Below, piece after piece: positions 700 to 53,699 of a stretch of 64,000 bases of DNA; within the stretch, counting starts at the first letter, position 1, and each line of letters begins with the position of its first letter. Source of the DNA: Macrostomum lignano (taxonomy: Eukaryota); NCBI GenBank assembly GCA_002269645.1, contig NIVC01000650.1, positions 310,126-374,125 of the forward strand. The letters are read 5' to 3'. Made by a program: the position numbers and the translations under genes. The notes under the pieces were generated by a model, which was given only the letters and a program-made list of their open reading frames with translations, ran no database searches and had not been told where the DNA came from.

Positions 700-1883
700 A
701 TGTCGAGACTCGAACCCGAATGGTTTGATGACGGCTTGCCGAGCTTCAACGTCTCTCGGAACTCATCAACGCGAAAACCGAGCTGGCAGCTCGACTATCG
801 TCAGTTTCATGTCCACGTCTTCTCGTGGCTCTTCCCGCTGCTGATGTCGCTGGGAGTCTGGGGCAACGCCAGCTGCCTGCTGGTGCTGCTGCGGCACCCG
901 AAGTGCTTCCCGTTCTCTGTGCGGCTCTGGATGCTCACCACCTGCTGCGTGGACCTCCTGCTGGTCGGAGGAAAGTCGGTCACGCACTACCTGGCGCCCA
1001 GCGTCCTCGGACAGACTCTGGGCGTGCCGATCTTCCGAACCGAGTCCAACTTCCCGGTGTGCGTGGCCTACTACCTGGCCACCCTGTGGCTGCTGCACGG
1101 CAGCCCTTTCTTACGCCTGGGCTTCTGCCTGCACTCGCTGGTCGTCACTCTGGCGCCCATGCGGCAGCGCAGTCTGCTGCGTCAGCGGAACATTGTTGCC
1201 TGGCAGGCGCTGCTGCTGCTGCTCAGCCTCCTGCCCTGCGTCCGGGTGGCCAGCGCCTTCTGGAGCAGACAACAGTCGCGCTGTCTGTTCCGGAAAAACG
1301 ACTGGATTGAAGTAGTGTACCGGCTGTACACAGTATTAGCCTCTCGCCTGCTGGTGTTCGTGGCTCTCCTGACGTCCCTGGCCGTTATCCTGGTCAGTCT
1401 GAGACGCAGCCAGCACAATGTCAACAGCTCCATAACGTCTGGCCCTGGCGTCAGAAGCAACGTCAGCCATCTGGCAGCTACCGCAGCCTCCGCGCAGACG
1501 CGGATCTTTGCCTTTACCAGCCTGATCTTCATTGCTTGTGAAGCGCCGTATTGCGTTCTAAAGCTGCTGCCCACCTGGGCGCGGTGGACTGTACCCAGGT
1601 CACTCACCGGCTAGCTGTCCTGCTCAATCATGTGATGTATCTGAATCCCGCGCTGAATTGGCTGCCCTATCTAGTTGCGACGAAGTTTCGACGACACTAT
1701 CGAGCCATGCTGACCCCAGCTGGATGCTGCTGTAGCTGCTGCGATGGTGGGAATTTCAAGCACTGGCAGTCTGGATCTTCTAGAGCAGCTACATGTAACA
1801 TGCCAAGTGCCTATGATGCTGCAATCGGGGCTGTTGAGACCGCGACCCCGATTGCTTGTTCCGACAGAGTGTGCCAATTATGA
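700..1883 (+). CDS. Rhodopsin-like (class A) orphan/peptide-type GPCR, intronless, with one frameshift near 1594
   Basis: ORF 700-1614 gives an N-glycosylated N-terminus (NVS, NSS), TM1 with GN (LGVWGNASCLLVLL), TM2 (CVDLLLV), TM3 Cys, TM5 and TM6 (FIACEAPY). TM7 and helix 8 (LAVLLNHVMYLNPALNWLPYLVATKFRRHY) lie in the frame of ORF 1551-1883. One extra C in the CCC at 1594-1596 fuses them into about 394 aa. Confidence 0.8.
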
Positions 1884-8061: not shown

Positions 8062-8257
8062 TATAAGACCGTGGGTTGAGTTGCAGTGAATAACAAAACG
8101 TGAGGAGACCTCACTGGCTCACGCCAATATATTTATTGCCAAAGTTGGGTTGGGTGTAATCACCCTAAGCACACACACGCCGCAGCGTTAAACCCCAACC
8201 CCCAAACAAGCCAGACGTGCACATCTAAGTGCACGCGCACCCACAAGCCAGACTACA
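8062..8257 (-). repeat. 3' LTR
   Basis: Direct repeat of 12239-12452. Minus strand starts TGTAGTC and ends TCTTATA (CA end mutated). AATAAA on the minus strand near 8133. Confidence 0.9.
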
Positions 8258-8269
8258 CTACTTCCCCCT
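8258..8269 (-). other. Polypurine tract (PPT)
   Basis: AGGGGGAAGTAG on the minus strand, directly abutting the 3' LTR. Confidence 0.85.
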
Positions 8270-8292
8270 AGAAGCAAAAGACATTTCCCGAG

Positions 8293-11200: not shown

Positions 11201-11568
11201 AGTCGGGATCTGTCGACAGCCGTCGGCAGCGCACCGATATCGGTGAAGTTGATCTTGCGCGGCAATCTGTCGAACAGCGACTTGTCCATCAACGAAACTT
11301 GCGCGCCGGTGTCGAGCAAAGCAGGCGCTGACACGCTGCCAAAGTGCACCTTCACGAAGACTGAAGGCGCTGATCTGAGGGCCCCTTTTGAGCGGGTCGG
11401 TGCTGGCCCCAGGCTGCCGACCCTCAGAAGTTTCCATGCGGCTGACCAGTTGGTGTCGGGCACACCGCGGCGGAGTGACTCTTGCCTGAGCACCGGCTGC
11501 AGCGGCTGCCGATCGCTTTTTGGGCACCGCCTAGTGATGTGACCCGGCTTGCCACAGCTGAAGCACAT
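8293..11568 (-). pseudogene. Gypsy gag-C/pol remnant (zinc knuckle, protease, partial RT, RNase H, integrase)
   Basis: CFSCGKPGHITRRC; ALLDTGAQVSLM; FGMCNAPATFQRLM...YIDDSIVFS; FVLICDSSQFAVGAVL...ERNYSATDRELLAL; HLGVDRT...WWPGL; FNPSGNGIVER...WDSKLPYVTWAYNT; WKGPYRVL. Spread over several frames. Confidence 0.93.
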
Positions 11569-11939
11569 GATGGGTCCCTTCTGACGCCTGTCTCTTCCGG
11601 GTGGTCCCGTTCACCCACTGGCTGTCAGCTGCTGCATCTGCTGCTCCAGCTGGCTCAGTCGTCTGTCTTCCACCGAAACCGCAGCTGATGAGGCTATAGT
11701 TGCGTGGCTCAACAGCTCAAGCTTGCAGCTCTGTTGACGATGGCGGCCAGCGAACACGAGTCCGCGTCCTGGTCTTCAACAGCGCATCTCTCACGGCAGA
11801 TGGCAGGAGGCGCATCAGGCGAAACTTCACGTCCTTTTCCCGAGCCGCCACGGAGTCGTCTGGGCGGGCCCGAAGGTGGAGAAGCTTCAGGCTGTAGCCG
11901 AGCTCCCTCAGCGACTCGTTGGGCTTTCACTTTCGCCCT

Positions 11940-12218
11940 TCAAACTCCTCCATTTGCTCTGTAGTAGCTCAGACTATTGCCGAAGAACTCGATCAGCTTT
12001 TCCTTCAGCTTTTCATAGCTGGCTGACACGTCTGCCAGCTGCTCCCAGACGAAGATTTGCGCTTCTCCTGTCACCAGCAGTCTCAGCTTCTTTGCCTTCT
12101 TCTTGTCGTCCCATTCGCAGTCGTCGACGAAGTCTTCAAAGGTGCTTAGCCTCATTCTCACGTTGGAGTCGCCGCTAAACTTTGGAGGCAATAAACTGGC
12201 TTGCTCTGATTTGGCCAT
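11940..12218 (-). pseudogene. Gypsy gag N-terminal fragment
   Basis: ATG just downstream of the PBS. PPKFSGD...FEDFVDDCEWDD...KLRLLVTGEA...YEKLKEKL is a typical retrotransposon capsid start. Frameshifted afterwards. Confidence 0.8.
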
Positions 12219-12221
12219 ACT

Positions 12222-12234
12222 GAGACTGCTGCCA
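12222..12234 (-). other. Putative primer-binding site (TGGCAGC..., tRNA-Leu-like)
   Basis: TGGCAGCAGTC begins 4 nt after the 5' LTR. TGG is complementary to the tRNA CCA end. The tRNA identity is an inference. Confidence 0.5.
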
Positions 12235-12238
12235 CAAG

Positions 12239-12452
12239 TGTAAGACCGTGGGTTGAGTTGCAGTGAATAACAAAAACGTGAGGAGACCTCACTGGTTCAC
12301 GCCAATATATATATTGCCAAAGTTGGGGGGGGGGGGGTGTAAAACCAACCCTTATAAGCGCATACACACACACGCCGCAGCGCTAAACCCCAACCCCCAA
12401 ACAAGCCAGACGTGCACATCTAAGTGCTCACGCACCAACAAGCCAGACTACT
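12239..12452 (-). repeat. 5' LTR
   Basis: Direct repeat of 8062-8257. Ends ...TCTTACA on the minus strand. Confidence 0.9.
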
Positions 12453-13786
12453 TGGGGGTAGTCTTATTATTTATACTACCAGCATGAGACGTGGTATGAA
12501 AGGTGAGTGCGCCTGCAGTCGCAGAATATTGGATAGACGCTGCATGAGGATCAGAGGGTAAGATCACCAAAGTATTGAGCCGAACTTAACCAAATCAATA
12601 GCAGTAACTTCTAAATTAGTCCCCATACGATGCGAACCACGAGAGAGCTCTGGGACCAGCACTGATCCCCATCCCCTGCGCTGCATCGAACCTAATCTAC
12701 GTATACTGTAGGAAGGAAATTGCATTAAGATTGATTAAGATATTATTATCCACTCTTGGAATCTTGGGGCTTAGGAGGGAATTATAGTCTAAAACCGCTG
12801 ACCGCTAAAAGATCCCCCTATTGCAAGAGTCTAAAAGGGTTAATCAGGCTAGAACCTTCGTCAGTTACAGTGTACAGATCGGGAGTCCAGTCTCGTTAGC
12901 TATAGTGGGAGTTTTTACCGGGTGTACGATCCTACACAGGTACCTGGTGGCGGCCGCGCCTCTTGGCGTGTATACCTTCAAACAAAACACCGCGCGGGCC
13001 GCTGTCATTTACTGATGGCCGGGGGGATCTTGGCCACAACGTCAGCTTAATACCACATGCAGCATCCAGAGGCGGACAAAGTCCTAGGGGACAAGAGGGC
13101 CTAATGGTTGTACGCGTACCTTTCAGTGCCAGAGTCAATTTGCATGCATGCAGGGGTTTGCGAGATACTAACGTGTTTTGTATTGTACAGTACATAAATA
13201 ACGACCACAAACGGGATTATACATAGCTATACTCAGCTAAAAATCATCAGAGTTCCATCAAAAGCGTATTTTGTTGCATAGGAAATAACGTAACTTTCAT
13301 ACATATTGAAGAATTCCTTCGTAAAAATATTCGCTGGAAAAATCTGCGCTATAAAAACTACATGCACCATCTATTCTACTTTAGCAGCTTCCAGCCATTT
13401 TACTTTGGTAGACCATCCAATGGTTTCAATAATAAATGCATTTTTAGATTGCTTAGTTATCAAAACAGCAACCCTCAGACTCTTGGCAGGCAGAGGTCCA
13501 CTTTATCTTGTTTAAACCAGTGTATGCTTTTGCAGAAATTCAGCGTCAAAGTCAAACTCAGGATAATCACGTATTCATTTCCCGATTGACATTCAGATTC
13601 ACATTCAAATTTTAACAAAGCCGCTGTAACTTTTCTTTACTTAAACGAAACGCTTTAAAATTTTACAAAAACTTTGACGCAATCAAGAAAAAAAACTACG
13701 TAAAATATCTCGGCATTTAAAAATAGACTGTACAAATTATTCACATATAAAGTTTGTTCCTATCTCCTTAGTGTATTATTTACAAT

Positions 13787-17244: not shown

Positions 17245-18180
17245 CTTGTAAGCCTTGACATGTCAGCAATCCCCCCACAAGCCTTAACATATCAACTCCC
17301 CCTTGACATCTCAGCAATGCTCCCACAAGCCTTGAAATCTTAAAAAATCTGTCTATTTTCTAACCCTAACCCTAACCCTAACCCTAACCCTAAAGCATTG
17401 AAATTTCAGTAATTCTCTCTAAGAGTCTATAGCACTACTACAGCATTATAGCGATTCCCTGCAAGCCTCGACATCGTAGGGATTCCCAAATGAATCTCTT
17501 AACTTTGACATGAAGCTTCTTTTTTTTTTACATTACGCTTTTTCTATCAGCGATCCCTCCCGTGAGGAGCCAACAAATAATGTAATAACTTTTTTCCAAT
17601 AAACTACATGTAGCTTCTGACATTAGCCTTGACATCTCATTTATTCCCCCGTGAGCCTTGACATCTCAGCTATAGATAGATAGATAGATTCCCCTCGTAA
17701 GCCTTGACATGTCAGCGATGCCCCCCATAAACCTTGAAATCTAAAAAATCCCCTGTTAACCTTGAAACGCGCTAAAATCTAACCCTCAACCCAAACCTGA
17801 CGTAAACCTAACTTTCACCCAACCTAAAGCCTTGAAATCACAGCAATTCTTCTTCCCTAAGCCTTGGCATTTAAGTGATTCCTTCTTTAAGAATCACAGC
17901 ACTATAACGATTCCCTCCAAGCTTTGACATCGTAGCAATTCCCAAATGAATCTTTTAACTTTGACATGACTTTTATTTTATGTATACATAGTGCTCCTTT
18001 TATTTTTACATGACTCTTCTTCTATCAGCGCCCCCCCCCACCGTGGCAAGCCAACAAAGAATGCAATAAAAAACTTAAGTAAAGTACATGTACTTTGAAG
18101 TAGCTTCTGACTTTTGCTTTAACATCTCAGAAACCCCCCTGTAATCTCAGTTATTCTCTGTGAGCCTTGACGTCTCAGTA
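17245..18180. repeat. Diverged tandem duplication of an about 450-bp unit built from GCCTTGACATCTCAGC-like subrepeats
   Basis: GTAAGCCTTGACATGTCAGC at about 17248 and 17697, followed by collinear motifs (TTGACATCGTAG, TTCCCAAATGAATC, TTCTATCAGCG, GCCAACAAA, GTAGCTTCTGAC). Confidence 0.75.
17360..17393 (-). repeat. Interstitial telomeric repeat (TTAGGG)5-6
   Basis: CTAACC x5 plus CTAA read directly. Confidence 0.9.
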
Positions 18181-19415: not shown

Positions 19416-19457
19416 CTGGATAGAAATAATCCTATACATGTAGCCAAGCTTATCAAG

Positions 19458-21790
19458 CGCAGTAATCCTTGGCTATCGAGTGCAGTAATCCTTGGTTTAT
19501 TAATAGCAATAATCCATGGCTTATCGAGTGCAGTAATCCTTGGTTTATTAATAGCAATAATCCTTGGCTTATCGAGTGCAGTAATTCATGGTTTATTAAT
19601 AGCAATAATCCTTGGCTTATCGAGTGCAGTAATCCTTGGTTTATTAATAGCAATAATCCATGCCTTATCGAGTGCAGTAATCCTTGGTTTATTAATAGCA
19701 ATAATCCTTGGCTTATCGAGTGCAGTAATTCATGGTTTATTAATAGCAATAATCCATGGCTTATCGAGTGCAGTAATCCTTGGTTTGCCAAGAGCAATAG
19801 TCCTTGGCTTATCGAGTGCAGTAATCCTTGGTTTGCCAAGAGCAATAGTCCTTGGTTTATTGAGTGCAGTAATCCTTGGTTTATTAATAGCAATAGTCCT
19901 TGGTTTATTGAGTGCAGTAATCCTTGGTTTATTAATAGCAATAATCCTTGGCTTATCGAGTGCAGTAATCCTTGGTTTGCCAAGTGCATAATCCTTGGTT
20001 TATCGAGTGCAGTAATCCTTGGTTTATTAATAGCAATAATCCTTGGCTTATCGAGTGCAGTAATCCTTGGTTTATTAATAGCAATAATCCATGGCTTATC
20101 GAGTGCAGTAATCCTTGGTTTGCCAAGAGCAATAGTCCTTGGCTTATCGAGTGCAGTAATCCTTGGTTTGCCAAGAGCAATAGTCCTTGGTTTATTGAGT
20201 GCAGTAATCCTTGGTTTATTAATAGCAATAATCCTTGGCTTATCGAGTGCAGTAATCCTTGGTTTGCCAAGAGCAATAGTCCTTGGTTTTTTGAGTGCAG
20301 TAATCCTTGGTTTATTAATAGCAATAATCCTTGGCTTATCGAGTGCAGTAATTCATGGTTTATTAATAGCAATAATCCTTGGCTTATCGATTGCAGTAAT
20401 CCTTGGTTTGCCAAGTGCATAATCCTTGGTTTATTAATAGCAATAATCCTTGGTTTATCGAGTGCAGTAATCCTTAGTTTATTAATAGCAATAATCCTTG
20501 GCTTATCGAGTGCAGTAATCCTTGGTTTATTAATAGCAATAATCCATGGCTTATCGAGTGCAGTAATCCTTGGTTTGCCAAGAGCAATAGTCCTTGGCTT
20601 ATCGAGTGCAGTAATCCTTGGTTTGCCAAGAGCAATAGTCCTTGGTTTATTGAGTGCAGTAATCCTTGGTTTATTAATAGCAATAGTCCTTGGCTTATCG
20701 AGTGCAGTAATCCTTGGTTTATTAATAGCAATAATCCTTGGTTTATCGAGTGCAGTAATCCTTGGTTTATTAATTGCAATAATCCTTGGCTTATCGAGTG
20801 CAGTAATCCTTGGTTTATTAATAGCAATAATCCATGGCTTATGAGTGCAGTAATCCTTGGTTTATTAATAGCAATAATCCTTGGCTTATCGAGTGCAGTA
20901 ATCCTTGGTTTGCCAAGAGCAATAGTCCTTGGCTTATCGAGTGCAGTAATCCTTGGTTTGCCAAGAGCAATAGTCCTTGGTTTATTGAGTGCAGTAATCC
21001 TTGGTTTATTAATAGCAATAATCCTTGGCTTATCGAGTGCAGTAATCCTTGGTTTGCCAAGAGCAATAGTCCTTGGTTTTTTGAGTGCAGTAATCCTTGG
21101 TTTATTAATAGCAATAGTCCTTGGTTTATTGAGTGCAGTAATGCTTGGTTTATTAATAGCAATAATCCTTGGCTTATCGATTGCAGTAATCCTTGGTTTG
21201 CCAAGTGCATAATCCTTGGTTTATTAATAGCAATAATCCTTGGTTTATCGAGTGCAGTAATCCTTAGTTTATTAATAGCAATAATCCTTGGCTTATCGAG
21301 TGCAGTAATCCTTGGTTTATTAATAGCAATAATCCATGGCTTATCGAGTGCAGTAATCCTTGGTTTGCCAAGAGCAATAGTCCTTGGCTTATCGAGTGCA
21401 GTAATCCTTGGTTTGCCAAGAGCAATAGTCCTTGGTTTATTGAGTGCAGTAATCCTTGGTTTATTAATAGCAATAGTCCTTGGCTTATCGAGTGCAGTAA
21501 TCCTTGGTTTATTAATAGCAATAATCCTTGGTTTATCGAGTGCAGTAATCCTTGGTTTATTAATTGCAATAATCCTTGGCTTATCGAGTGCAGTAATCCT
21601 TGGTTTATTAATAGCAATAATCCATGGCTTATGAGTGCAGTAATCCTTGGTTTATTAATAGCAATAATCCTTGGCTTATCGAGTGCAGTAATCCTTGGTT
21701 TGCCAAGAGCAATAATCCTTGGCTTATCGAGTGCAGTATTCCTTGGTTTGCCAAGAGCAATAATCCTTAGCTTATCGAGTGCAGTAATCT
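19458..21790. repeat. 2.3-kb satellite of 24-bp monomers in 48-bp dimers, with a 790-bp higher-order duplication
   Basis: AGTGCAGTAATCCTTGGTTTATTA / ATAGCAATAATCCTTGGCTTATCG alternate. Rare variants recur at exactly +790 (20281/21071, 20412/21202, 20471/21261, 20841/21631). Confidence 0.95.
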
Positions 21791-24830: not shown

Positions 24831-24949
24831 ACTTCTCCTTCCCGCGTTATACTATCCGCGCTATCCAGCCTCTACTATCCCCTCTTTCCACCTCCAGCGC
24901 CTCCCCCTCTCTAGCCCCTACCCTCTCTTCCTTTACTTTCCAGCCCCCA

Positions 24950-25900
24950 TCCTCTACTCCACTCCAGCGCCCTCCCTCTCCTCCACTCCAGCGCCCTCTC
25001 TCTCCTCCACTCCAGCGCCCTCCCTCTCCTCCACTCCAGCGCCCTCCCTCTCCTCCACCCCAGCGCCCTCCCTCTCCTCCACTCCAGCGCCCTCCCTCTC
25101 CTCCACCCCAGCGCCCTCCCTCTCCTCCACTCCAGCGCCCTCCCTCTCCTCCACTCCAGCGCCCTCCCTCTCCTCCACTCCAGCGCCCTCCCTCTCCTCC
25201 ACTCCAGCGCCCTCCCTCTCCTCCACTTCAGCGCCCTCCCTCTCCTCCACTCCAGCGCCCTCCCTCTCCTCCACTCCAGCGCCCTCCCTCTCCGCCACTC
25301 CAGCGCCCTCCCTCTCCTCCACTCCAGCGCCCTCCCTCTCCTCCACTCCAGCGCCCTCCCTCTCCTCCACTCCAGCGCCCTCCCTCTCCTCCACTCCAGC
25401 GCCCTCCCTCTCCTCCACTCCAGCGCCCTACCTCTCCTCCACCCCAGCGCCCTCCCTCTCCTCCACTCCAGCGCCCTCCCTCTCCACTCCAGCGCCCTCC
25501 CTCTCCTCCACTCCAGCGCCCTCCCTCTCCTCCACTCCAGCGCCCTCCCTCTCCTCCACCCCAGCGCCCTCCCTCTCCTCCACTCCAGCGCCCTCCCTCT
25601 CCACTCCAGCGCCCTCCCTCTCCTCCACTCCAGCGCCCTCCCTCTCCTCCACTCCAGCGCCCTCCCTCTCCTCCACTCCAGCGCCCTCCCTCTCCTCCAC
25701 CCCAGCGCCCTCCCTCTCCTCCACTCCAGCGCCCTCCCTCTCCACTCCAGCGCCCTCCCTCTCCTCCACTCTAGCGCCCTCCCTCTCCTCCACTCTAGCG
25801 CCCTCCCTCTCCTCCACTCCAGCGCCCTCCCTCTCCTCCACTCCAGCGCCCTCCCTCTCCTCCACTCCAGCGCCCTCCCTCTCCTCCACTCCAGCGCCCA
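24950..25900. repeat. 24-bp C-rich minisatellite, about 40 copies
   Basis: Unit CTCCACTCCAGCGCCCTCCCTCTC with occasional 21-bp variants. Confidence 0.97.
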
Positions 25901-27024
25901 CCCTCTACTCTCCTTGGTTATGCCTTCGTTACGCTCTTCCCTCCTCTCTGTTTTACTTACTGTGTCATGCATAACCCGTCTGCTACAGTGTTTTTAAATA
26001 GCCTTTTATACCCTCCTCTTTCCCTTACCCCTCCTCCCCCGGCGGCTCCCCTTCTCGTAACTCTGCTAATAAAATCGTAATTCTTCTTCTCTTCAGAATA
26101 ATTTGCCCAGCTGCGAACTGTGATGGTGCATACCGGGTACTCGCAATTTAAAAAGCGTATGCTTCTTACTGATTTACTGATTTAATTCCGACGCAACCAA
26201 GCAAATCGTTTACTTTCAAGTCCGTGCATTTTCGTTCGGCGTTAATGCCGTGTGGCGTTGGTGTAATACTATCGCGAAATTCAATTTCCAATGTCATTAT
26301 CTAACTATTGTCGCTTTTCTGTATTACAACTATATACTATACTTCTGCATTTATTGACGTAACATTGTGCCAATAATGTCACATTGTGTGGCCCCAATAT
26401 GAATCTGTATGCAACTTATAGCACAATGATCATTTTAATCGCTTGAAATACATTGTAATGTAATACATGTACTGTATCGCTTTTGGCAATCGAAACGAGA
26501 CTTTAGCCAGACTCCTCACTGATCCAAATGCTCCTCAAGCAAAGGTACGAGTATATGGAAAGCAGACTGAGCTCCGCAGACTTGGTATATTTGATCTTCG
26601 GATCGCGGATAGAACCAAGGAAATCTTGGTACGTAAATAAAATTGGAGTCACTTTTCCTACTTCCACTTTCCCTGCTCTTTCCCTGACCGCAGTCTGTGC
26701 CCCAGGCTTAAGTTAGACCAACGCAAAATACTAACCTGAATAGGAAGCAAGCAACTCACTTCCCACTCTAGTCTTTTTCTGCCACTGTTGTCTTGCAATA
26801 CTCGCAAAGATCTCGTATGGCGTCCTATTTGAATTGGCGCAAGTCTCGTTTACATAGTCGAAAGCAATACTGGTGCCAATTATTTGTGTCGATCAAGTTT
26901 CCTAGAGAATGATTTGTTGATAACTGTATATTCGCTGTCTTAGAGCTGCACGCTGTGTTTAACCATTACTTTGTCGTAGAGGAGCTGATGAAGGGAGGCG
27001 TTGGGGCGGACCTTTTGCAGGGGC

Positions 27025-30231: not shown

Positions 30232-30590
30232 GCCCGGATCCTCAGTTGCTGGGCCAGCTTCCTAGATCCTCAGTTGCTGGGCCAGCTTCCTAGATCCTCA
30301 GTTGCTGGGCCAGCTTCCTAGATCCTCAGTTGCTGGGCCAGCTTCCTAGATCCTCAGTTGCTGGGTCAGCCTCCCAGATCCTCATTTGCTGGGCCAGCCT
30401 CCCAGATCCTCAGTTGCTGGGTCAGCCTCCCAGATCCTCAGTTGCTGGGCCAGCCTACCAGATCCTCAGTTGCTGGGTCAGCCTCCCAGATCTTCAGTTG
30501 CTGGGTCAGCCTCCCAGATCCCCCCCCAGTTGCTGGGTCAGCCTCCCAGATCCCCCCCCAGTTGCTGGGTCAGCCTCCCAGATCCCCAGC
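30232..30590. repeat. 28-bp minisatellite in the LITAF intron
   Basis: Unit GATCCTCAGTTGCTGGG(C/T)CAGC(T/C)TCC(T/C)A; period 28. Confidence 0.93.
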
Positions 30591-30623
30591 TGTACACTAC
30601 CAGTCAATACTTCTCACCCGCAG

Positions 30624-30902
30624 GCCACCGGAGGCCCAGGCCCGTCCGCCGGCACCACCACCATCATAATCCGCGAGTTCGGGCCCTACCCGTCCAGCAT
30701 CGAGTGCCCGTTCTGCCGCTGTCACGTGCTCACTAGCGTGAGCTACACCCCCGGCTGTCTGGCCTGGCTCAGCGGCTCCCTGCTGTGCCTGTTCGGCCTG
30801 TGGCCCTGCGCCTGCATCCCCTGCTGCATCAACGACTGCCAGGATGCCAGGCACTTTTGCCCGCACTGCGGCCAGTATCTGGGCACCTATGCTAGAATTT
30901 AA
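30624..30902 (+). CDS. LITAF: LITAF/CDIP1-like protein, exon 2 (LITAF zinc-ribbon domain)
   Basis: In-phase acceptor TTCTCACCCGCAG| at 30623. GPYP...CPFC...hydrophobic WLSGSLLCLFGLWPCACIPCC...HFCPHCGQYLGTY. Spliced product about 139 aa. Confidence 0.92.
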   Translation, partial: ATGGPGPSAGTTTIIIREFGPYPSSIECPFCRCHVLTSVSYTPGCLAWLSGSLLCLFGLWPCACIPCCINDCQDARHFCPHCGQYLGTYARI

Positions 30903-32300: not shown

Positions 32301-32896
32301 TCATATTAAACAGAGGAGGATATTGAGAGGCTCATAATAACAGGGACTGAGCTGTTGACAAAAGGCAACATCAAAGGAACAAGAGTGCGCAAAGGAACAG
32401 ACCTATCTGTAAAAAAGCAGGCAACTGTGTTTGCTTTTTAGTCGATTTTGTCAAACTGAACAGCACAGACAGCGTTATGCTTGGCTCAGCTTCAGTCTCA
32501 ATGTATTCTAGAGCGTGTCTGTCATTGAGAGAAAGTGCAAATCTGGCTAATTGGTCTCACCCCTCTTTCCCAATGCTTCTTTCTATTTTGTTGCTGCGAA
32601 TGGGTATTGCTCGTAATTACAAAGTTTATCACAAGAAGGCTTTGCCTATTTTTTCTCTTTCCTAAATTCTCAATCCACTCTTTATCCAGCCTGTCGGAAT
32701 AATTGCGATAATACAGTTTTGTTAATTCGGTGCCAGCCTTTTGCTATTTATTCAGTGCAAAATACTTCAAAATCTTGATGCTGTTCGTGTTTGAATTTCT
32801 TTTAATTTTTGAAGTTTCTGTCGCCATGCTAGGCATGTCTGTAGAAAGAGTCTAATAATTCACTTCTAGAGCTGGGTAAAAATTAACCCAGGTGAC

Positions 32897-33890
32897 ACTT
32901 CATTTGGCGCCTCCTGTGACACTTAATTTGGCGCCTCCTGTGACACTTAATTTGGCGCCTCCTGTGACACTTAATTTGGCGCCTCCTGTGGCGTCATTTG
33001 GCGCCTCCTGTGACACTTAGTTTGGCGCCTCCTGTGCCATTTAGTTTGGCGCCTCCTGTGACACTTAATTTGGCGCCTCCTGTGACACTTAATTTGGCGC
33101 CTCCTGTGACATTTAGTTTGGCGCCTCCTGTGATACATAATTTGGCGCCTCCTGTGACACTTTATTTGGCGCCTCCTGTGACACTTAATTTGGCGCCTCC
33201 TGTGGCGTCATTTGGCGCCTCCTGTGGCGTCATTTGGCGCCTCCTGTGACACTTAGTTTGGCGCCTCCTGTGACACTTCATTTGGCGCCTCCTGTGACAG
33301 TTAGTTTGGCGCCTCCTGTGACACTTCATTTGGCGCCTCCTGTGACACTTCATTTGGCGCCTCCTGTGACACTTCATTTGGCGCCTCCTGTGCCATTTAG
33401 TTTGGCGCCTCCTGTGACACTTCATTTGGCGCCTCCTGTGCCATTTAGTTTGGCGCCTCCTGTGACACTTCATTTGGCGCCTCCTGTGACAGTTAGTTTG
33501 GCGCCTCCTGTGACACTTCATTTGGCGCCTCCTGTGACACTTCATTTGGCGCCTCCTGTGACATTTAGTTTGGCGCCTCCTGTGACAATTCATTTGGCGC
33601 CTCCTGTGACAGTTAGTTTGGCGCCTCCTGTGACAGTTAGTTTGGCGCCTCCTGTGACAGTTAGTTTGGCGCCTCCTGTGAAATTTAGTTTGGCGCCTCC
33701 TGTGACATTTAGTTTGGCGCCTCCTGTGACAGTTAGTTTGGCGTCTCCTGTGAAATTTAGTTTGGCGCCTCCTGTGAAATTTAGCTTGGCGCCTCCTGTG
33801 ACATTTAGTTTGGCGCCTCCTGTGACAGTTAGTTTGGCGCCTCCTGTGAAATTTAGTTTGGCGCCTCCTGTGACACTTCATTTGGCGCCT
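32897..33890. repeat. 24-bp GGCGCC-core minisatellite, about 41 copies
   Basis: Unit TTTGGCGCCTCCTGTGACACTT(A/C)A and variants. Confidence 0.97.
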
Positions 33891-34394
33891 GTAACACCTA
33901 ATGTGGCGCCCTGTGACACTCAAATGTGTCACTTCTTTGACACTCAAATGTGTCACTTCTTTGACACTCAAATGTGTCATCATTGTGACACCAATGTGTG
34001 ACACCTAATGTGACGCCACTGTCAGATGCCCAGTGCAGTGAATCGCCTGGGCGATTATGCTGAGTGAATTGCAGTCAGAGCCAATCAGCGATCTCGTCGA
34101 TATGCCTGCCTACTTGTACTCGAGTTACCCCGCTCTATCTTGCCTTTATACAGTCAAACTGCAGCTCTGCCGCAATTGCGTTGCCTCAAACGCATATCTT
34201 AGCGACCTAGTCGTATTATTGCTGCCTGCTTAAAAATTTAACGAATCTGCAGTGATACCGGCGCTTCGAGATTCGGTAAGTGAGCTAGCCGTTCACGAAA
34301 ATAAGTGATAATATCACTATTGTCCAATGTCATAAAGCTGATCATACTTGTGTTCATTAGTGACTTGCGCAATCAATTTTTATTAACTTGCCAT

Positions 34395-37991: not shown

Positions 37992-38074
37992 GTATGGAAC
38001 ATCCTGAAGCAGAAATTCTAGCTATGGTAGGATATTTATGATTGAAAATACCTGCAACCATGAGTCACCCGTAG

Positions 38075-39060
38075 AAGGAATACTCCAATGACCTTGGCAC
38101 GGCTGTGGAATCAAAACTCCAATGACCTTGACACGCCTGTGGAATGAAAACTCCAACGACCTTGACACGGCTGTGGAATGAAAACTCCAACGACCTTGAC
38201 ACGGCTGTGGAATGAAAACTTCAACGACCTTGACACGGATGTGGAATGAAAACTCCAATGACCTTGACACGTCTGTGGAATGAAAACTCCAACGACCTTG
38301 ACACGGTTGTGGAAAGAAAAACTTCAACGACCTTGACACGGCTTTGGAATGAAAACTCAAACGACCTTGGCACGGCTGTGGAAGGAAAACTCCAATAACC
38401 TTGACACGCCTGTGGAATGAAAACTCCAATGACCTTGACACGGCTGTGGAATGAAAACTCCAACGACCTTGACACGGCGTTGGAATGAAAATTCCAACGA
38501 CCTTGACACGGCTTTGGAATGAAAACTCCAACGACCTTGACACGGCTGTGGAATGAAAACTTCAACGACCTTGACACGGATGTGGAATGAAAACTCCAAT
38601 GACCTTGACACGTCTGTGGAATGAAAACTCCAACGACCTTGACACGGTTGTGGAAAGAAAAACTTCAACGACCTTGACACGGCTTTGGAATGAAAACTCA
38701 AACGACCTTGGCACGGCTGTGGAAGGAAAACTCCAATAACCTTGACACGCCTGTGGAATGAAAACTCCAATGACCTTGACACGGCTGTGGAATGAAAACT
38801 CCAACGACCTTGACACGGCGTTGGAATGAAAATTCCAACGACCTTGACACGGCTTTGGAATGAAAACTCCAACGACCTTGACACGGCTGTGGAATGAAAA
38901 CTCCAACGACCTTGACACGGCGTTGGAATGAAAATTCCAACGACCTTGACACGGCTTTGGAATGAAAACTCCAACGACCTTGACACGGCTGTGGAATGAA
39001 AACTCAAACGACCTTGGCACGGCTGTGGAAGGAAAACTCCAATAACCTTGACACGAGTGT
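38075..39060. repeat. 34-bp minisatellite with an about 340-bp higher-order block
   Basis: GAATGAAAACTCCAACGACCTTGACACGGCTGTG; the variant GGATGTGG recurs at 38237 and 38578. Confidence 0.96.
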
Positions 39061-43365: not shown

Positions 43366-44074
43366 GGTGAGATGCGGCTTGAGCTGCAGGCAGGCAGGTA
43401 GGAAGCTGGGTTGAGGTTGGAGAACCGATGAGGCACCCGTAAGCCGATTGGTTCGATGGACAGGAGCTGCGAAAAGGTGCCGCATTTTATAGACTTTTGG
43501 CTCAGAAGCTCAATTGAGCAGATGCTTGATAGGCAAAATTATTCAATTACGAGTATTAGCCTTCGATTTCATCTAACGAAATGCTGCAATTACACCCACT
43601 GCAGAGCAGGTGTGATTTGGGGAATCGATGCTACCTATTAAAGACCGAGCGTGTCCGCAATTATGGAGGTGGACCAGGAGATTCGGTATTTTGTCTCAAT
43701 TAAAAGGAAATTGCCAAAGTTGCCCCCGGCCAGGCTCGAGTGGTAAATTATCTGACGTCAGCAGGCCAGGAGCAGACAAGTACAATGTGGTGGCTTATTG
43801 TGGCCGCTGGTTTGCATTGCATCATAATCAATTCCACCCCAAAGTCGCGACTTGGTACGATAAAAATTGGCGATGGGAATGGCGGTTTCAGTTGAACAAC
43901 TGGAACCTTGCGAGTAAGGTAAAGATTAGGACGCCCATCACGACAGAGGTGGCGGCAGGACATGTCAAGGACTTCTTCACAATCGCTGTTCGTCTGTTTC
44001 TAAGTGTTGAGGAACGAGACGGCTGGGCTGAGCCGGAGGAACGAGCTGGGATCACTTGAGGCGATTTGGGTCTC

Positions 44075-44900
44075 TGATGTCTGATTTGTGTCGCTGATCT
44101 CTAAATTGTGTCTCTGATCTCTGAATTGTGTCTCTGATCTCTGAATTGTGTCTCTGATCTTTGAATTGTGTCTCTGATCTCTGAATTGTGTCTCTGATCT
44201 CTGAATTGTGTCTCTGATCTCTGAATTGTGTCTCTGATCTCTGAATTGTGTCTCCTGATCTGTGAATTGTGTCTCTGATCTGTGAATTGTGTCTCTGATC
44301 TCTGAATTGTGTCTCTGATCTGTGAATTGTGTCTCTGATCTGTGAATTGTGTCTCTGATCTCTGAATTGTGTCTCTGATCTCTGAATTGTGTCTCTGATC
44401 TCTGAATTGTGTCTCCTGATCTGTGAATTGTGTCTCTGATCTCTGAATTGTGTCTCTGATCTCTGAATTGTGTCTCTGATCTCTGAATTGTGTCTCTGAT
44501 CTCTGAATTGTGTCTCCTGATCTGTGAATTGTGTCTCTGATCTGTGAATTGTGTCTCTGATCTCTGAATTGTGTCTCTGATCTGTGGATTGTGTCTCTGA
44601 TCTGTGAATTGTGTCTCTGATCTCTGAATTGTGTCTCTGATCTCTGAATTGTGTCTCTGATCTCTGAATTGTGTCTCCTGATCTGTGAATTGTGTCTCTG
44701 ATCTGTGAATTTTGTCTCTGATCTGTGAATTTTGTCTCTGATCTCTGAATTGTATCTCTGATCTGTGAATTGTGTCTCTGATCTCTGAATTGTGTCTCCT
44801 GATCTTTGAATTGTGTCTCTGATCTCTGCCTTGTGTCTTTGATCTCTGAATTGTGTCTCTGATCTGTGACTTGTGTCTCTGATCTCTGCATTGTGTCTCA
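44075..44900 (+). repeat. 20-bp minisatellite, right arm
   Basis: TGTGTCTCTGATCT(C/G)TGAAT, about 40 copies. Confidence 0.96.
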
Positions 44901-49612: not shown

Positions 49613-50743
49613 TCACGCAGTGGCCGGTGTAGCAGACCTCTGCCCGTCCGGACGCTCTGTCCTATTGACACACGAAAGCAGTTCCACAACTGACTGCCGG
49701 AAGCTGCGACTTTGGTGCAGCATCACCAGGACATTGCAGGCCTGATTCGTTATTGCCAGAGCCTTGACCACGAACACCATCTCGAGTAGGATGGGCACGG
49801 ATTCCTGGGTTCTGTTCAGGAAGAACAGGCTCCATTCCATGGGCAGTGAAGGCAGATTCGACAGCAAAGTCACCGTTGACAGGACAAGAACAATCTTTGT
49901 AGCGCGCAGTCTCGTGGCGTCTTGCTTGAGGCGGTCGCTCAATCCGATACCGGTGGATAGAGCTTGGCTGCGTTCGCGTCTCACTCGAAACATGCCAATC
50001 AAAAGGTTTAAGTTGAACATCAGGATGAGCAGCAGCAGCAGTGTTGGCGGGCTGCAGGCCATGTTCCAGTAGAACTGCTCCGCAAAGCTGCCGTCCGATG
50101 GCACGCAGCCAACAAGCACGTGACCAGATCCGTCCGGGAATCGAGCCTGCTTGCTAAAGAGCATCTGCGGGCATGACAAAAGCAGGGCAAACAGTCCAGC
50201 GGTCAGCATTGTCTTGACCGCGAACTTTGGACCGAAGCGATGAAATCGGAATGGAGCAGCCATCGACAGGGCCCGATCCGCCACCATGGCCAGGAGAAGA
50301 GCGGCAGGTAGGACCTGGCCCATACCGGCAATAAAAAAGTGCAGCTTGCAGCCCCACAGCTGTTGATTGTACAGAATGAATCCGTATTTGCCTCCGCTCA
50401 GCCAGGGCAGGCCTTTGGGTAGGAAGAGCGCGATCAGTCCTAGGCCTGTCACGGTGGCAGCGTCGGCCAGAGCGATGCAGCCAAAGTAGGTGTTCTGCCT
50501 CGTGAGCGGCCTCTGGCGAATGAGCGTCACGTATCCAACCAGACCGTTGCCTAGGAGGCTAAACACCATCACAACAGGTAGGACGCAGCCATAGACTGCT
50601 CCAGCCAGTGTCGATGCGATGCAAGCAGCTCTCTTGTCAACCAGGCAATCTTTGAGCAGACCCATCAGGCTAAACATTTCGATCTCGATGTCATGATAGT
50701 TTTTAGTAGTTGATGATGTGCCATTTCCATTTTGTTGCTCCAT
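49613..50743 (-). CDS. Rhodopsin-like orphan GPCR, intronless, 376 aa (resembles flatworm-specific orphan receptors)
   Basis: Seven hydrophobic segments: TM1 GN, TM2 IALAD, LPKGLP segment, GCKL, DRA in place of DRY, TM6 SNLP, TM7 NQACN, helix 8 SFRQSV. N-glycosylation site NGT at the N-terminus. Confidence 0.92.
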   Translation of the reverse strand: MEQQNGNGTSSTTKNYHDIEIEMFSLMGLLKDCLVDKRAACIASTLAGAVYGCVLPVVMVFSLLGNGLVGYVTLIRQRPLTRQNTYFGCIALADAATVTGLGLIALFLPKGLPWLSGGKYGFILYNQQLWGCKLHFFIAGMGQVLPAALLLAMVADRALSMAAPFRFHRFGPKFAVKTMLTAGLFALLLSCPQMLFSKQARFPDGSGHVLVGCVPSDGSFAEQFYWNMACSPPTLLLLLILMFNLNLLIGMFRVRRERSQALSTGIGLSDRLKQDATRLRATKIVLVLSTVTLLSNLPSLPMEWSLFFLNRTQESVPILLEMVFVVKALAITNQACNVLVMLHQSRSFRQSVVELLSCVNRTERPDGQRSATPATA

Positions 50744-50950: not shown

Positions 50951-51589
50951 AAACTCAACGATCGTCACTTTGATGGGCTATAGGCCGAGTTGTGTTGCCT
51001 TGCTGGGACTCTTACACGGATATTGTTGGATATTAGCTAATAACGCAATTTAACGGGTCGTTTTAGTATATGTGTATGGATTTTGAATTCTGAAGAAGTT
51101 ATTTATAGAAAATCGCGCGTTACATTAGTTTTAATTGACCTTTGTATTCCCATCGGCGTACAGTACATATATTAGGCAGTCAAGAACCTGTGGGTAACAA
51201 ATCTTCCGAGTTTCCTCAAACAAGCGCCAATCAAGAGCTGTTACAATAATTTAACACAAAAATCCCAAAACCAATAGCACAAGATTTAATGCATTCATTA
51301 TCAGCGTTTGAGATCGGCTCTGCTCAATAGTAGCCAAGCTATCAGAATTGAATCTCACACCTCAGAATAAAAGTTTTGTATACATACAGTACATGTACAT
51401 GTATTTTTGGTCAAAAAGCTATTGCAGAAGTACTGCAAATCCGCTTAAAGTTCGCTAAATTTTATCAGTTTTTTATTCATTCCTTAAAAATCGCATTTTA
51501 AGAAATGAAGAAAGAGAACAAGACCAATTTAATTCATTCCATAAGACTATTAACACATCTCATTTACGTCTATATTTACACGTCTTATA

Positions 51590-52181
51590 TACTGTCCGTC
51601 AAAAGTTCCGGAACCCTTGCTACGATGTCTTCTAGCGGACATAATTTCAGTCCGTTTCAATTGTAACTTGATTCAAATGAAAGCTGCGGATCTCAGCTCC
51701 ATGATGTGGTCAAGAAAAAGTTTATTCGAAGGAGCGCGTGTGCGAACAGGCCAGTGTTATGTACATAAAGGTTAGAGAAAAAAAGTGAGGAAAAGACAAA
51801 CAAGCAATTGTCTATGGTTGCTGAGTCTATGGAGCAAACACACATGGGAAGGAATCAGTTTGCGCGCAGTGTTCAGCCTGGCTAACATTAGTCTATGGCC
51901 AAAACTTGTGTTGAAATCAACAGGCTCTTATGGATTCTTGTGCAGTCAGCTTTCATGGGAGAGTCAATTGCTTGTTTGTCTTTTCCTCACTTTTTTCTCT
52001 AACCTTTATGTATTAACACTGGCCTGTTCACACGCGCTCCTTCGAATAAACTTTTTCTTGACCACATCATGGAGCTGAGATCCGCAGCTTTCATTTGAAT
52101 CAAGTTACAATTGAAACGGACTGAAATTATGTCCGCTAGAAGACATCGTAGCAAGGGTTCCGGAACTTTTGACGGACAGTA
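51590..52181. mobile_element. Tc1/mariner-type MITE (about 590 bp) with about 220-bp near-perfect TIRs and a TA target
   Basis: 51590-51810 is the reverse complement of 51965-52181. Ends TATA-CTGTCCGTC ... GACGGACAG-TATA. About 155-bp spacer. Confidence 0.9.
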
Positions 52182-52945
52182 TATATACTGACGGCGGCTA
52201 TATAGTGCTTAAAAGACCGAAGCTCAATTATAGCTAGCACAACACCAACAACAACAAAATACGTTGTCAGTCAGTCAGCAGACAACGTCACAGGGCACGT
52301 TTCAAGGCCTGGGCGCGAACTTAGGCAGCACCGCCGGTGCAGTGTCCGGGGCGCCGGCATCAACCAGCAGGCAGTCGACGAAACGCCGAATGCGGGCCTA
52401 CCCCCGACGGTAGGGTGCCTGCAGCGTCAGCAGCAGCAACTCCTGCACCGGCTGCGGGCAGTACGACTCGGCTCGGATGAATGGCCTGTCAGCTGGAGTC
52501 GCCGACGGCGCAACAGTTCGCTGGGACGAGACAGGCCGGTGCGGCGATCGAGTGCCACATTGGTGACTCGCTCGTAGCCGATCTTGAAGGTGGCACGCAG
52601 CAGGCCAACGTGCGCCGCATCGACCAGCTGTTCGAGCGAATCCGTCAGCGTCCAGGTCTCAGCGTTGTACAACAGGACGGTCTCGATTACCGCCTGGAAC
52701 AACGCCGCCCTCTGGTGGTCGGACAGCTGGCCTCGGACTGCAGAACAGCCTTCACGGAACGAAAGGCAGCCCAGGGAAGTCCACGACGAGGTTGCAACTA
52801 GGTCCTCGCGAACGTCAGACACCGGTACCGTCAAAACGGTAGACGAACTGTTGACAGCACGGAAGCTTCGTCACCTGCCCACTAGCGCCTCGGCAGAAAA
52901 TTGCAGCCTCGATGTCTTCCGGTACGCAGAGCACGATGGTCTTCT

Positions 52946-52994
52946 CAAGGACTACTTAAGTATACATGTATATACGTTACTTTAGTCGTCCTTG
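52946..52994. mobile_element. 49-bp mini-MITE, 7-bp TIR CAAGGAC, perfect 8-bp TSD GGTCTTCT
   Basis: The TSD at 52938-52945 and 52995-53002 is identical. Removing the insert restores LINE codons NTQKT-IVLCVP. Confidence 0.9.
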
Positions 52995-53333
52995 GGTCTT
53001 CTGCGTGTTGACCACCAGGCCGACGCTTGCAACAACGCTCACCAGCCAGCCCAGCTGGCGCTGGGCACCCGCGACGGTCGAAGATAGCATGGGCGAGATC
53101 GTCGTAGCCAAGCACGCTGAGCCGACTCTCCGATTGGCGTCGACCCAGGCATTTCTGCATGCAGCAGGAATTGCCGTCATCGTTAGAAGGGAGAGCAGCC
53201 CGCAGCACCCAGTCAAGCACCAGAACGATCGGAACGGCTCAAGCGTATCTCCTAAAGCACCCCAGAGGATGTCTCAAAGAAATCCGACAGGCCGTCCATA
53301 GCACAGAAGCTAGCGTTCGTACTATTATACAGC

Positions 53334-53383
53334 CAAGGACGACTGAAAGTAATCTATATATATCTACTTAAGTATAGTCCTTG
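53334..53383. mobile_element. 50-bp mini-MITE, second copy in the opposite orientation
   Basis: CAAGGAC...GTCCTTG; flanks TATACAGC / GATGCAGC (6/8). Removal restores VMALYNS in the LINE frame. Confidence 0.82.
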
Positions 53384-53699
53384 GATGCAGCGCCATGACA
53401 GCAGAAATCAGCTGCTCTGGCACGTTGTACGCACGAAGCACCTTGAGGAGCAGGGTCCTCACAAACAGTGGAAATTAAAGGCTTCCTAAGTCAAATATCA
53501 GCTGAGAGCAATCAGTATTATAAGCTCGACATGGTAGGTCCGCGCTTCCTCGCGGAATCGGCAAATATATTTACATAAATTATAAATACACTATTATTGC
53601 CCGATTATTGCACAAAATTTTAGTCGCTGTCTTCGATCAGCATTCCGTCTAACGACGCTACATGTATATATGCTGCAGTACATGTATGTTAAATGATAT

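What the first reader, a model, noticed from the sequence alone, without database searches (positions are those of the whole stretch)
52938..53391. A 49-50-bp transposon inserted twice into the same LINE, 340 bp apart
Seen: CAAGGAC TIRs and a perfect 8-bp TSD (GGTCTTCT) for copy 1, a 6/8 TSD for copy 2, and opposite orientations. In both cases removing the insert plus one TSD restores the RTE reverse-transcriptase frame, which shows they are true insertions. The interior is mostly palindromes (TACTTAAGTA, TATACATGTATA). Established: CANRG-type termini with 8-bp TSDs and local hopping characterise P-superfamily elements; hAT elements also make 8-bp TSDs. Inference: an extremely small non-autonomous DNA transposon, below typical MITE-finder size limits and near the minimum for transpososome assembly, so likely unannotated.
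Basis: partly seen in the sequence, partly recalled or inferred. Interest (0 to 1): 0.8.

Follow-up and report, generated by a model that had tools for sequence, protein, structure and literature searches.

The report
Tiny transposon-end scars in a flatworm LINE
Two 49-50-bp palindromic inserts with 8-bp target duplications really do interrupt an old LINE in the flatworm Macrostomum lignano. They look more like scars left when a full-size P-element-like transposon cut itself out than like a record-small jumping gene, though that reading is not excluded.

Summary
Copy 1 (52946-52994) has a perfect 8-bp duplication, GGTCTTCT. Copy 2 (53334-53383) has a 6/8 duplication. They lie in opposite orientation inside a 5'-truncated, decayed RTE LINE of Macrostomum lignano. 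Related RTE copies carry the copy-1 target once and are codon-colinear across the copy-2 site, so both are true insertions.

Each unit is two terminal arms of 17-19 nt plus a 12-14-nt TA-rich centre. The arms of the two copies show 0 substitutions in 35 aligned nt. The centres are no more alike than shuffled sequence.

A metagenome scan found three more units of 36-40 bp in an unidentified AT-rich eukaryote. Each has a perfect 8-bp duplication and near-identical arms, and all three centres differ.

This anatomy (duplication, about 17-20 nt of each end, a variable junction, duplication) matches published Drosophila P-element excision junctions, where the transposase cuts 17 nt inside each end.

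My best reading (about 0.55) is that these are donor-site excision scars of a P-like element. No full-length parent and no transposase was found. A genome-wide census of centres and arm lengths would decide between the two.

The parts
52246..53475 (-). Host element: 5'-truncated, frameshifted RTE-type LINE (C-terminal half of the reverse transcriptase plus the 3' tail ending in TTG repeats).
   Evidence: The stitched translation hits RVT_1-containing proteins at up to 68% identity. Named hits are Macrostomum lignano. Alignment A1. 80-83% DNA identity to L009 and L010.
52938..52945 (.). Left target-site duplication of unit 1 (GGTCTTCT).
   Evidence: Present once in the paralogous empty sites L009 and L010.
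52946..52962 (+). Unit 1, left arm, 17 nt (CAAGGACTACTTAAGTA).
   Evidence: Pairs with the right arm at 15/17 positions.
52963..52976 (+). Unit 1, centre or junction, 14 nt (TACATGTATATACG). Candidate filler or repair-synthesis tract.
   Evidence: Not significantly similar to the centre of unit 2. Its 12-mer TACATGTATATA recurs at 53659.
52977..52994 (+). Unit 1, right arm, 18 nt (TTACTTTAGTCGTCCTTG).
52995..53002 (.). Right target-site duplication of unit 1 (GGTCTTCT).
53326..53333 (.). Left target-site duplication of unit 2 (TATACAGC). This is the copy that matches the ancestral LINE codons (..ALY N..).
53334..53352 (-). Unit 2, right arm, read here as its reverse complement; 19 nt (CAAGGACGACTGAAAGTAA).
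   Evidence: Differs from the unit-1 right arm by a 1-nt indel only.
53353..53364 (-). Unit 2, centre or junction, 12 nt (TCTATATATATC).
53365..53383 (-). Unit 2, left arm, read here as its reverse complement; 19 nt (TACTTAAGTATAGTCCTTG).
   Evidence: Differs from the unit-1 left arm by a TA indel only.
53384..53391 (.). Right target-site duplication of unit 2 (GATGCAGC). Matches the left copy at 6 of 8 positions.

Best explanation
The two units are donor-site scars of a full-length cut-and-paste DNA transposon of the P-element type. They are not transposons in their own right.

Proposed sequence of events:
1. A full-length element with termini CAAGGAC[T/G]ACT.AAGTA inserted into the old RTE copy and duplicated 8 bp of target. 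This step is shown by the duplications and the empty sites.
2. The element later excised. Like Drosophila P transposase, the enzyme cut the 3' strand at the element boundary and the 5' strand about 17-20 nt inside each end. Both duplications and a 17-20-nt single-stranded tail of each terminal repeat stayed on the chromosome. This step is inferred.
3. The two non-complementary tails were joined by end joining, with microhomology, small deletions or templated TA-rich filler, possibly after a little repair synthesis. This step is inferred.

The result is duplication + arm + variable junction + arm + duplication. Two scars 340 bp apart in opposite orientation would be either the trail of local re-insertions or a local insertion hotspot. 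The units have no function of their own. They are fossils that record where the element sat and how it was cut.
For: (1) Both units are true insertions with 8-bp duplications.

(2) Each unit is only two arms of 17-19 nt plus 12-14 nt. The arms end at the same positions in both copies (17 and 18 nt in copy-1 numbering).

(3) The arms of the two copies show 0 substitutions in 35 nt, while the centres differ (4 of 12 positions plus a 2-nt length difference; Fisher p = 0.003). Uniform decay of one 49-mer does not explain that.

(4) There are three independent units in metagenome Ga0209450 (L001, L003, L005). They are 36, 40 and 37 bp, each with a perfect 8-bp duplication at unrelated loci. The outer 15 nt of their arms differ by one substitution in total, yet the centres are GTAATATTAC, GTATTAC and TACTAC. 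These read as a blunt 20+20 join, a 1-2-nt microhomology join, and a trimmed end with a 3-nt templated insert.

(5) Published P{wa} excision junctions have the same layout: acccagacCATGATGAAATAACATA | TATGTTATTTCATCATGacccagac, with microhomology, blunt and templated-insertion classes (PMC2895639).

(6) P transposase makes a 17-nt staggered cut, makes 8-bp duplications and hops locally. Its sequence-specific binding sites lie internal to the terminal repeats, so they would be absent from such short units (PMC7776569).

(7) The same pattern in 596 Gb of prokaryotic genomes gave only terminator hairpins without duplications, and gave nothing in viral contigs.
Against: - No full-length parent element, solitary end or P/THAP9-type transposase was found in the window, in L015 (20.7 kb of M. 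lignano) or in any fetched locus. The superfamily assignment is therefore by analogy only.
- Both M. lignano units carry long fillers of similar size (12-14 nt) and similar TA-rich composition. In wild-type Drosophila the mean insert is 5.5 nt. This similarity would be expected if the two descend from one 49-50-mer.
- All five units keep long arms on both sides. Random nibbling might be expected to give more short arms, although my search pattern selected for at least one long arm.
- The arm length reaches 20 nt in L003, which is longer than the Drosophila 17 nt.
- The sample is only five units.
Confidence: 0.55

Rival explanations
1. Mobile micro-MITE. The 36-50-bp unit is a non-autonomous transposon made only of two terminal repeats and a short spacer. 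It is excised and re-integrated as a unit by a P- or hAT-type transposase supplied in trans. The two window copies arose by local hopping or from two source copies.
For: - Discrete boundaries, inverted termini and 8-bp duplications in 5 of 5 units.
- The termini are similar in two different organisms.
- The two window copies have the same arm lengths and centres of similar size and composition.
- The two copies are clustered (p about 0.012).
- Centre differences could reflect instability of palindrome centres or of TA repeats.
Against: - No two of the five units share a centre, while the arms are nearly invariant.
- 36-50 bp is far below the length at which duplex DNA can loop to bring both ends into one synaptic complex (established DNA mechanics; my inference).
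- With a P-type 17-nt stagger, only 2-15 bp of duplex would hold the excised unit together.
- Drosophila P transposase binds sites internal to the terminal repeats, and such sites are absent here.
- There are only two copies in 64 kb and none in a further 20.7 kb of M. lignano.
Confidence: 0.3
2. In-situ internal deletion without a P-type stagger. A full-length element of another 8-bp-duplicating superfamily (hAT, Merlin, Novosib, Zisupton) was reduced to its two ends. The cause would be abortive gap repair: synthesis-dependent strand annealing that stopped early and annealed at palindromic microhomologies such as CTTAAG, CATG or TATA.
For: - The termini fit the hAT YARNG rule, recalled from memory.
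- The centres of unit 1 (..TATACATGTATA..) and unit 2 ((TA)n) are themselves palindromic. That is what annealing of two inverted nascent strands requires.
- SDSA followed by end joining is the commonest outcome after P{wa} excision (PMC2895639).
Against: - Arm lengths are tightly bunched at 15-20 nt in all five units. Abortive synthesis has no reason to stop there.
- The hAT target consensus nTnnnnAn is not met: no duplication matches both positions and only 3 of 10 half-positions match (from the sequences).
- hAT excision leaves flank-derived palindromic nucleotides, not remnants of the terminal repeats (established knowledge).
Confidence: 0.1
3. Not transposon-related. The units are chance palindromes, hairpin RNA genes or captured filler DNA.
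For: - The units fold as hairpins.
- There is a far-sub-threshold Rfam miRNA hit (19 bits against a gathering score of 96).
Against: - Four perfect 8-bp duplications and one 6/8 duplication at unrelated loci.
- The inserts are precise relative to paralogous empty sites.
- Zero matches are expected by chance.
- The Rfam hit is at noise level.
Confidence: 0.02

Closest known systems
Drosophila melanogaster P-element excision footprints (for example P{wa} donor-site junctions; 17-nt staggered cleavage by P transposase)
   Same: - An 8-bp duplication is kept on both sides.
- About 17 nt of each terminal repeat is retained as an inverted pair.
- The junction between the two remnants varies: blunt, microhomology, or templated AT-rich insertion.
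- P elements also re-insert locally.
(PMC2895639; PMC7776569.)
   Different: - The terminal sequence is unrelated: CAAGGAC... against CATGATG...
- Arms reach 18-20 nt here.
- The M. lignano junction inserts are longer (12-14 nt).
- These are natural, fixed or old scars in a flatworm and an unknown eukaryote, not laboratory events.
- No P-type transposase has been linked to them.
[quoted passage not shown]
   Same: Non-coding, with terminal inverted repeats, target-site duplications and discrete boundaries.
   Different: - 36-50 bp is below any MITE I know of.
- There is no evidence of a homogeneous multi-copy family.
- The centres differ in every copy.
- There is no subterminal sequence for transposase binding.
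hAT superfamily elements (Ac, hobo, Hermes, Tol2)
   Same: 8-bp duplications; 5'-CAAGG fits the YARNG terminus rule (from memory); terminal repeats of 10-25 bp.
   Different: - The target consensus nTnnnnAn is not seen.
- hAT excision makes hairpins on the flanks and leaves no terminal-repeat remnants.
- hAT elements need subterminal repeats.

Membership tests
P superfamily (as the source of the scars) | 8-bp (7-9 bp) target-site duplication | tested here: met
   8/8, 6/8, 8/8, 8/8 and 8/8 in the five units.
P superfamily (as the source of the scars) | Staggered cleavage about 17 nt inside each terminal repeat, so that the donor site keeps about 17 nt of each end | tested here: inconclusive
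   Arms are 17/18, 19/19, 20/20, 18/19 and 15/18 nt. This is consistent with a 17-20-nt stagger, but cleavage was not observed and there are only five cases.
P superfamily (as the source of the scars) | Transposase with THAP DNA-binding, RNase-H-like catalytic and GTP-binding domains, encoded between the terminal repeats | tested here: not met
   No other end of this type lies in the window, in L015 or in other loci, so no bounded ORF exists in the DNA available. Whether one exists elsewhere in the genome could not be tested.
P superfamily (as the source of the scars) | Terminal 5'-CANRG (Repbase rule, recalled from memory) | tested here: met
   CAAGG at all ten termini. The rule itself was not verified in a paper.
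hAT superfamily | 8-bp duplication with consensus nTnnnnAn | tested here: not met
   The length is met. The consensus is not: no duplication has both T2 and A7, and 3 of 10 half-positions match (sequences).
hAT superfamily | Terminal 5'-YARNG and short terminal repeats | tested here: met
   CAAGG; imperfect repeats of 17-19 nt.
hAT superfamily | BED-finger and hAT-dimerisation-domain transposase; subterminal repeats | tested here: not met
   There is no room for subterminal repeats in 36-50 bp, and no transposase lies between such ends in the available DNA.
MITE (mobile non-autonomous family) | Small, non-coding, with terminal inverted repeats and a target-site duplication | tested here: met
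MITE (mobile non-autonomous family) | Multiple copies of homogeneous length and internal sequence at unrelated loci | tested here: inconclusive
   Five units carry five different centres. Centre similarity between the two window copies is no better than shuffles (488 of 5000). The genome-wide count was not obtainable.
MITE (mobile non-autonomous family) | A related autonomous element with the same termini | not testable with these tools
   The M. lignano genome could be reached only through one anchor protein (L015).

The most novel reading that the evidence does not exclude
The units really are mobile: a 36-50-bp transposon family made only of two 17-20-nt ends, conserved between a flatworm and another animal.

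Because a P-type stagger would leave almost no duplex, each hop might integrate the two ends as separate pieces and re-create the centre by end joining. That would explain why every copy has its own centre. It would be the smallest eukaryotic mobile element known and a new way of moving, with the element rebuilt at each insertion.
Probability: 0.25. Interest if true: 0.75.

Novelty: new member of a known kind. Interest (0 to 1): 0.45.

Why it matters
**If these are excision scars.** They are natural fossils showing that the unusually long staggered cut of P transposase, biochemically shown only for Drosophila (17 nt), is used by distant relatives in flatworms and at least one other eukaryote. 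Such scars could be mined genome-wide to map where cut-and-paste elements once sat and how each species repairs the resulting breaks. They also warn annotators that a unit with inverted termini and a target duplication under 60 bp need not be a MITE.

**If they are mobile.** They would set a new lower size limit for a eukaryotic transposon and would challenge current ideas on how the two ends are brought together.

Tried and rejected
- **Other copies in the window.** Searches with each end at up to 3 mismatches, and with a degenerate end motif, found only the four known arms.
- **The excess of CAAGGAC in the window.** There are 25 against 6.7 expected, but the excess comes from an unrelated 48-bp minisatellite at 19450-21789.
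- **Reaching the same locus in other assemblies.** Exact look-ups of the neighbouring GPCR ORF and of two LINE ORFs were not on record. The GPCR has no homologue in the protein database.
- **The one M. lignano contig I could fetch.** L015 stops 12.6 kb short of the site and has no unit.
- **Longer RTE-bearing contigs.** L016 and L017 contain no ends of this type.
- **Viral-contig scan.** Zero hits.
- **Prokaryote scan.** Only terminator hairpins and one repeat, none with a duplication.
- **Other metagenome hits.** L002, L004, L007 and L008 are GTCCTTG satellites, and L006 has no duplication. I treat these as chance hits.
- **Literature.** No paper contains the terminal sequences or the sample identifiers. 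Searches for the smallest known MITE and for M. lignano transposon surveys gave nothing usable.
- **Rfam.** Only a noise-level hairpin hit.
- **Templated origin of the unit-1 centre.** A 12-mer recurs 670 bp away at 53659, but the motif is common in this window, so I did not build on it.
- **Pfam scan of all window ORFs for a transposase.** I prepared it and then dropped it, because no second pair of such ends exists to bound an element.

Full report
**What is there.** The pattern CAAGGAC-N25-50-GTCCTTG occurs exactly twice in the window, at 52946-52994 (49 bp) and 53334-53383 (50 bp). None is expected in shuffled sequence. Unit 1 is flanked by GGTCTTCT on both sides. Unit 2 is flanked by TATACAGC and GATGCAGC. 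The units are in opposite orientation. A generic scan for any 7-nt inverted terminus with an exact 8-nt flanking repeat finds only unit 1 plus one tandem-repeat artefact. A 6/8 flank match alone is at background level, 23 hits against 23 in a control. Unit 2 is therefore validated by homology to unit 1 and by the empty-site evidence, not by its duplication.

**Host sequence and organism.** The units sit in the minus-strand remnant of an RTE-type LINE at about 52246-53475. The LINE is 5'-truncated and has at least four frameshifts.
- Its stitched translation matches RVT_1 proteins at up to 68% identity. All named hits are Macrostomum lignano.
- A LITAF-domain ORF at 30330-30902 is 100% identical, over 49% of its length, to M. 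lignano BOX15_Mlig009274g1.
- The NCBI contig carrying that gene (NIVC01000650.1, fetched as L015) is colinear with window 9.7-40.3 kb. Identity is only 90-98%, and there is a length difference of about 10 kb.
- The window is therefore M. lignano, from another haplotype, homeologue or assembly.

**True insertions.**
- Deleting each unit plus one duplication gives ...SAVMALY|NST... and ...VVNTQKT|IVLCVP... These align without a gap to ten intact relatives.
- At DNA level, two related RTE copies from environmental assemblies (L010 and L009, 80-83% identical) carry AGAAGACC once where the window carries it twice around unit 1. The two BLAST segments overlap by exactly those 8 bases.
- L009 is colinear codon by codon across the unit-2 site.

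**Anatomy.**
- Each unit consists of two imperfectly inverted arms and a short centre. Unit 1 is 17 + 14 + 18 nt. Unit 2 is 19 + 12 + 19 nt.
- Between the two units the arms differ only by two small indels, with 0 substitutions in 35 aligned positions.
- The centres differ at 4 of 12 positions plus 2 nt in length, and are no more alike than shuffled sequence (488 of 5000 shuffles). The contrast between arms and centre gives Fisher p = 0.003.
- Uniform decay of one ancestral 49-mer does not produce that pattern.

**Relatives elsewhere.** One scan of JGI metagenome contigs with CAAGGAC-N0-6-CTTAAGTA-N10-30-GTCCTTG returned eight loci.
- Four are GTCCTTG satellites and one has no duplication.
- Three, all from sample Ga0209450 (L001, L003, L005), are units of 36, 40 and 37 bp at loci that share nothing else. 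The contigs are AT-rich and intron-bearing, so they are eukaryotic.
- Each of the three has a perfect 8-bp duplication: GTCGAATC, AAGAAAAC and GACCTAAC.
- L003 is a perfect 20+20 palindrome.
- The outer 15 nt of both arms differ by a single substitution across all three. All three centres differ (GTAATATTAC, GTATTAC, TACTAC).
- The shared motifs are partly there by construction of my pattern. The duplications, the second arm and the size are not.
- The same pattern found nothing in viral contigs. In 596 Gb of prokaryotic genomes it found only terminator hairpins without duplications.

**Interpretation.** The layout is duplication, then about 17-20 nt of one end, a variable junction, about 17-20 nt of the other end, then duplication. 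That is the layout of Drosophila P-element donor sites after excision.
- P transposase cuts the 5' strand 17 nt inside each terminal repeat, makes 8-bp duplications and tends to re-insert nearby. Its specific binding sites lie internal to the terminal repeats (PMC7776569).
- Sequenced P{wa} junctions read acccagacCATGATGAAATAACATA | TATGTTATTTCATCATGacccagac. They are joined blunt, by 1-10-nt microhomology, or with templated insertions (PMC2895639).
- The three Ga0209450 units read as a blunt join, a microhomology join, and a trimmed end with a 3-nt templated insert.
- The two M. lignano units read as full-length arms with 12-14-nt TA-rich filler.
- I therefore favour excision scars of a P-like element (confidence 0.55). 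The insertion step is shown. The excision, the stagger and the end joining are inferred by analogy.

**Why not simply a micro-MITE.**
- No two of the five units share a centre.
- 36-50 bp of duplex cannot loop to synapse its own ends (inference from DNA stiffness).
- With a 17-nt stagger, the excised 36-40-bp units would retain only 2-6 bp of duplex.
- The units lack room for internal transposase-binding sites.

**In favour of the micro-MITE.**
- The two M. lignano units have the same arm lengths and fillers of similar size and composition.
- All five units keep long arms.
- Palindrome centres and TA tracts mutate fast.
- I give this reading 0.3.

**Other readings.**
- A third reading is abortive gap repair of a hAT-like or other element. 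It fits the palindromic centres, but not the bunching of arm lengths at 15-20 nt and not the hAT target consensus (no duplication matches it). I give it 0.1.
- A non-transposon origin is excluded by the duplications and the empty sites.

**What is missing.**
- No full-length parent, solitary end or transposase was found in the window, in L015 or in any other locus.
- I could not reach the orthologous site in the NCBI assembly.
- The host of Ga0209450 is unidentified.
- No paper contains these terminal sequences.

**Clustering.** Two sites within 390 bp of each other in 64 kb has p of about 0.012. This fits local re-insertion or a hotspot under either reading, so it does not discriminate between them.

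**Verdict.** The evidence leans towards scars of an excised full-size element rather than a self-standing 49-bp transposon. Interest is moderate. These would be natural evidence for P-type long-stagger cleavage outside insects, with a minority chance of a record-small mobile element.

Noticed in passing
window 9715-40293 against L015 (NIVC01000650.1, GCA_002269645.1): The window is colinear with the published M. lignano contig, but at only 90-98% identity. About 17.4 kb of the window (12.3-29.7 kb, mostly minisatellite arrays) corresponds to about 7 kb in L015. This points to haplotype or homeologue structural variation.
   Followed up: partly
window 51586-52185: A foldback-type element of about 600 bp. 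Its arms are about 228 nt (97% identical overall, 157 nt perfect) around a 148-bp loop. The termini are CTGTCCGTCAAAAG... and it sits in TATATA sequence, so a TA or TATA duplication is possible. It lies directly next to the 3' end of the LINE.
   Followed up: partly
window 8192-12484: A GC-rich (62-63%) Ty3/gypsy-type retroelement on the minus strand, with integrase-, RT/RNase H- and protease/gag-like ORFs. It stands out against a 30-45% GC background.
   Followed up: no
window 49613-50743 (-) and 700-1614 (+): Two intronless seven-transmembrane receptor-like ORFs. The first matches Pfam 7tm_1 and Srw but has no homologue at E<=0.001 among 5.8 billion proteins. It is not in the NCBI M. lignano gene set.
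   Followed up: partly
window, whole length (for example 19450-21789, 24939-25910, 32892-33920, 38074-39055, 44066-44899): Very high density of minisatellite arrays (75 TRF rows; periods 19-48 bp, 20-50 copies each). Several create long spurious ORFs.
   Followed up: no
window 17360-17393: Interstitial telomere-like repeat: (CTAACC)x5.7, which is TTAGGG on the other strand.
   Followed up: no
window 53659-53670: The 12-mer TACATGTATATA from the centre of unit 1 recurs just outside the truncated 5' end of the LINE. It could be a template for junction filler or a coincidence; related 9-mers occur four times in the window.
   Followed up: partly
L009 (ENA ERZ2272135) and L010 (JGI 3300037309): Environmental assemblies contain RTE copies 80-83% identical in DNA to the M. 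lignano LINE. Either macrostomid DNA is present in those samples or the RTE family has spread horizontally.
   Followed up: no
L015 6383-6427: A 45-bp near-perfect palindrome, CACAAACCCAAGGACACGCGCG-AAG-CGCGTGTCCTTGGGTTTGTG. It contains CAAGGAC but its flanks are inverted, not direct. It is unrelated to the units.
   Followed up: no
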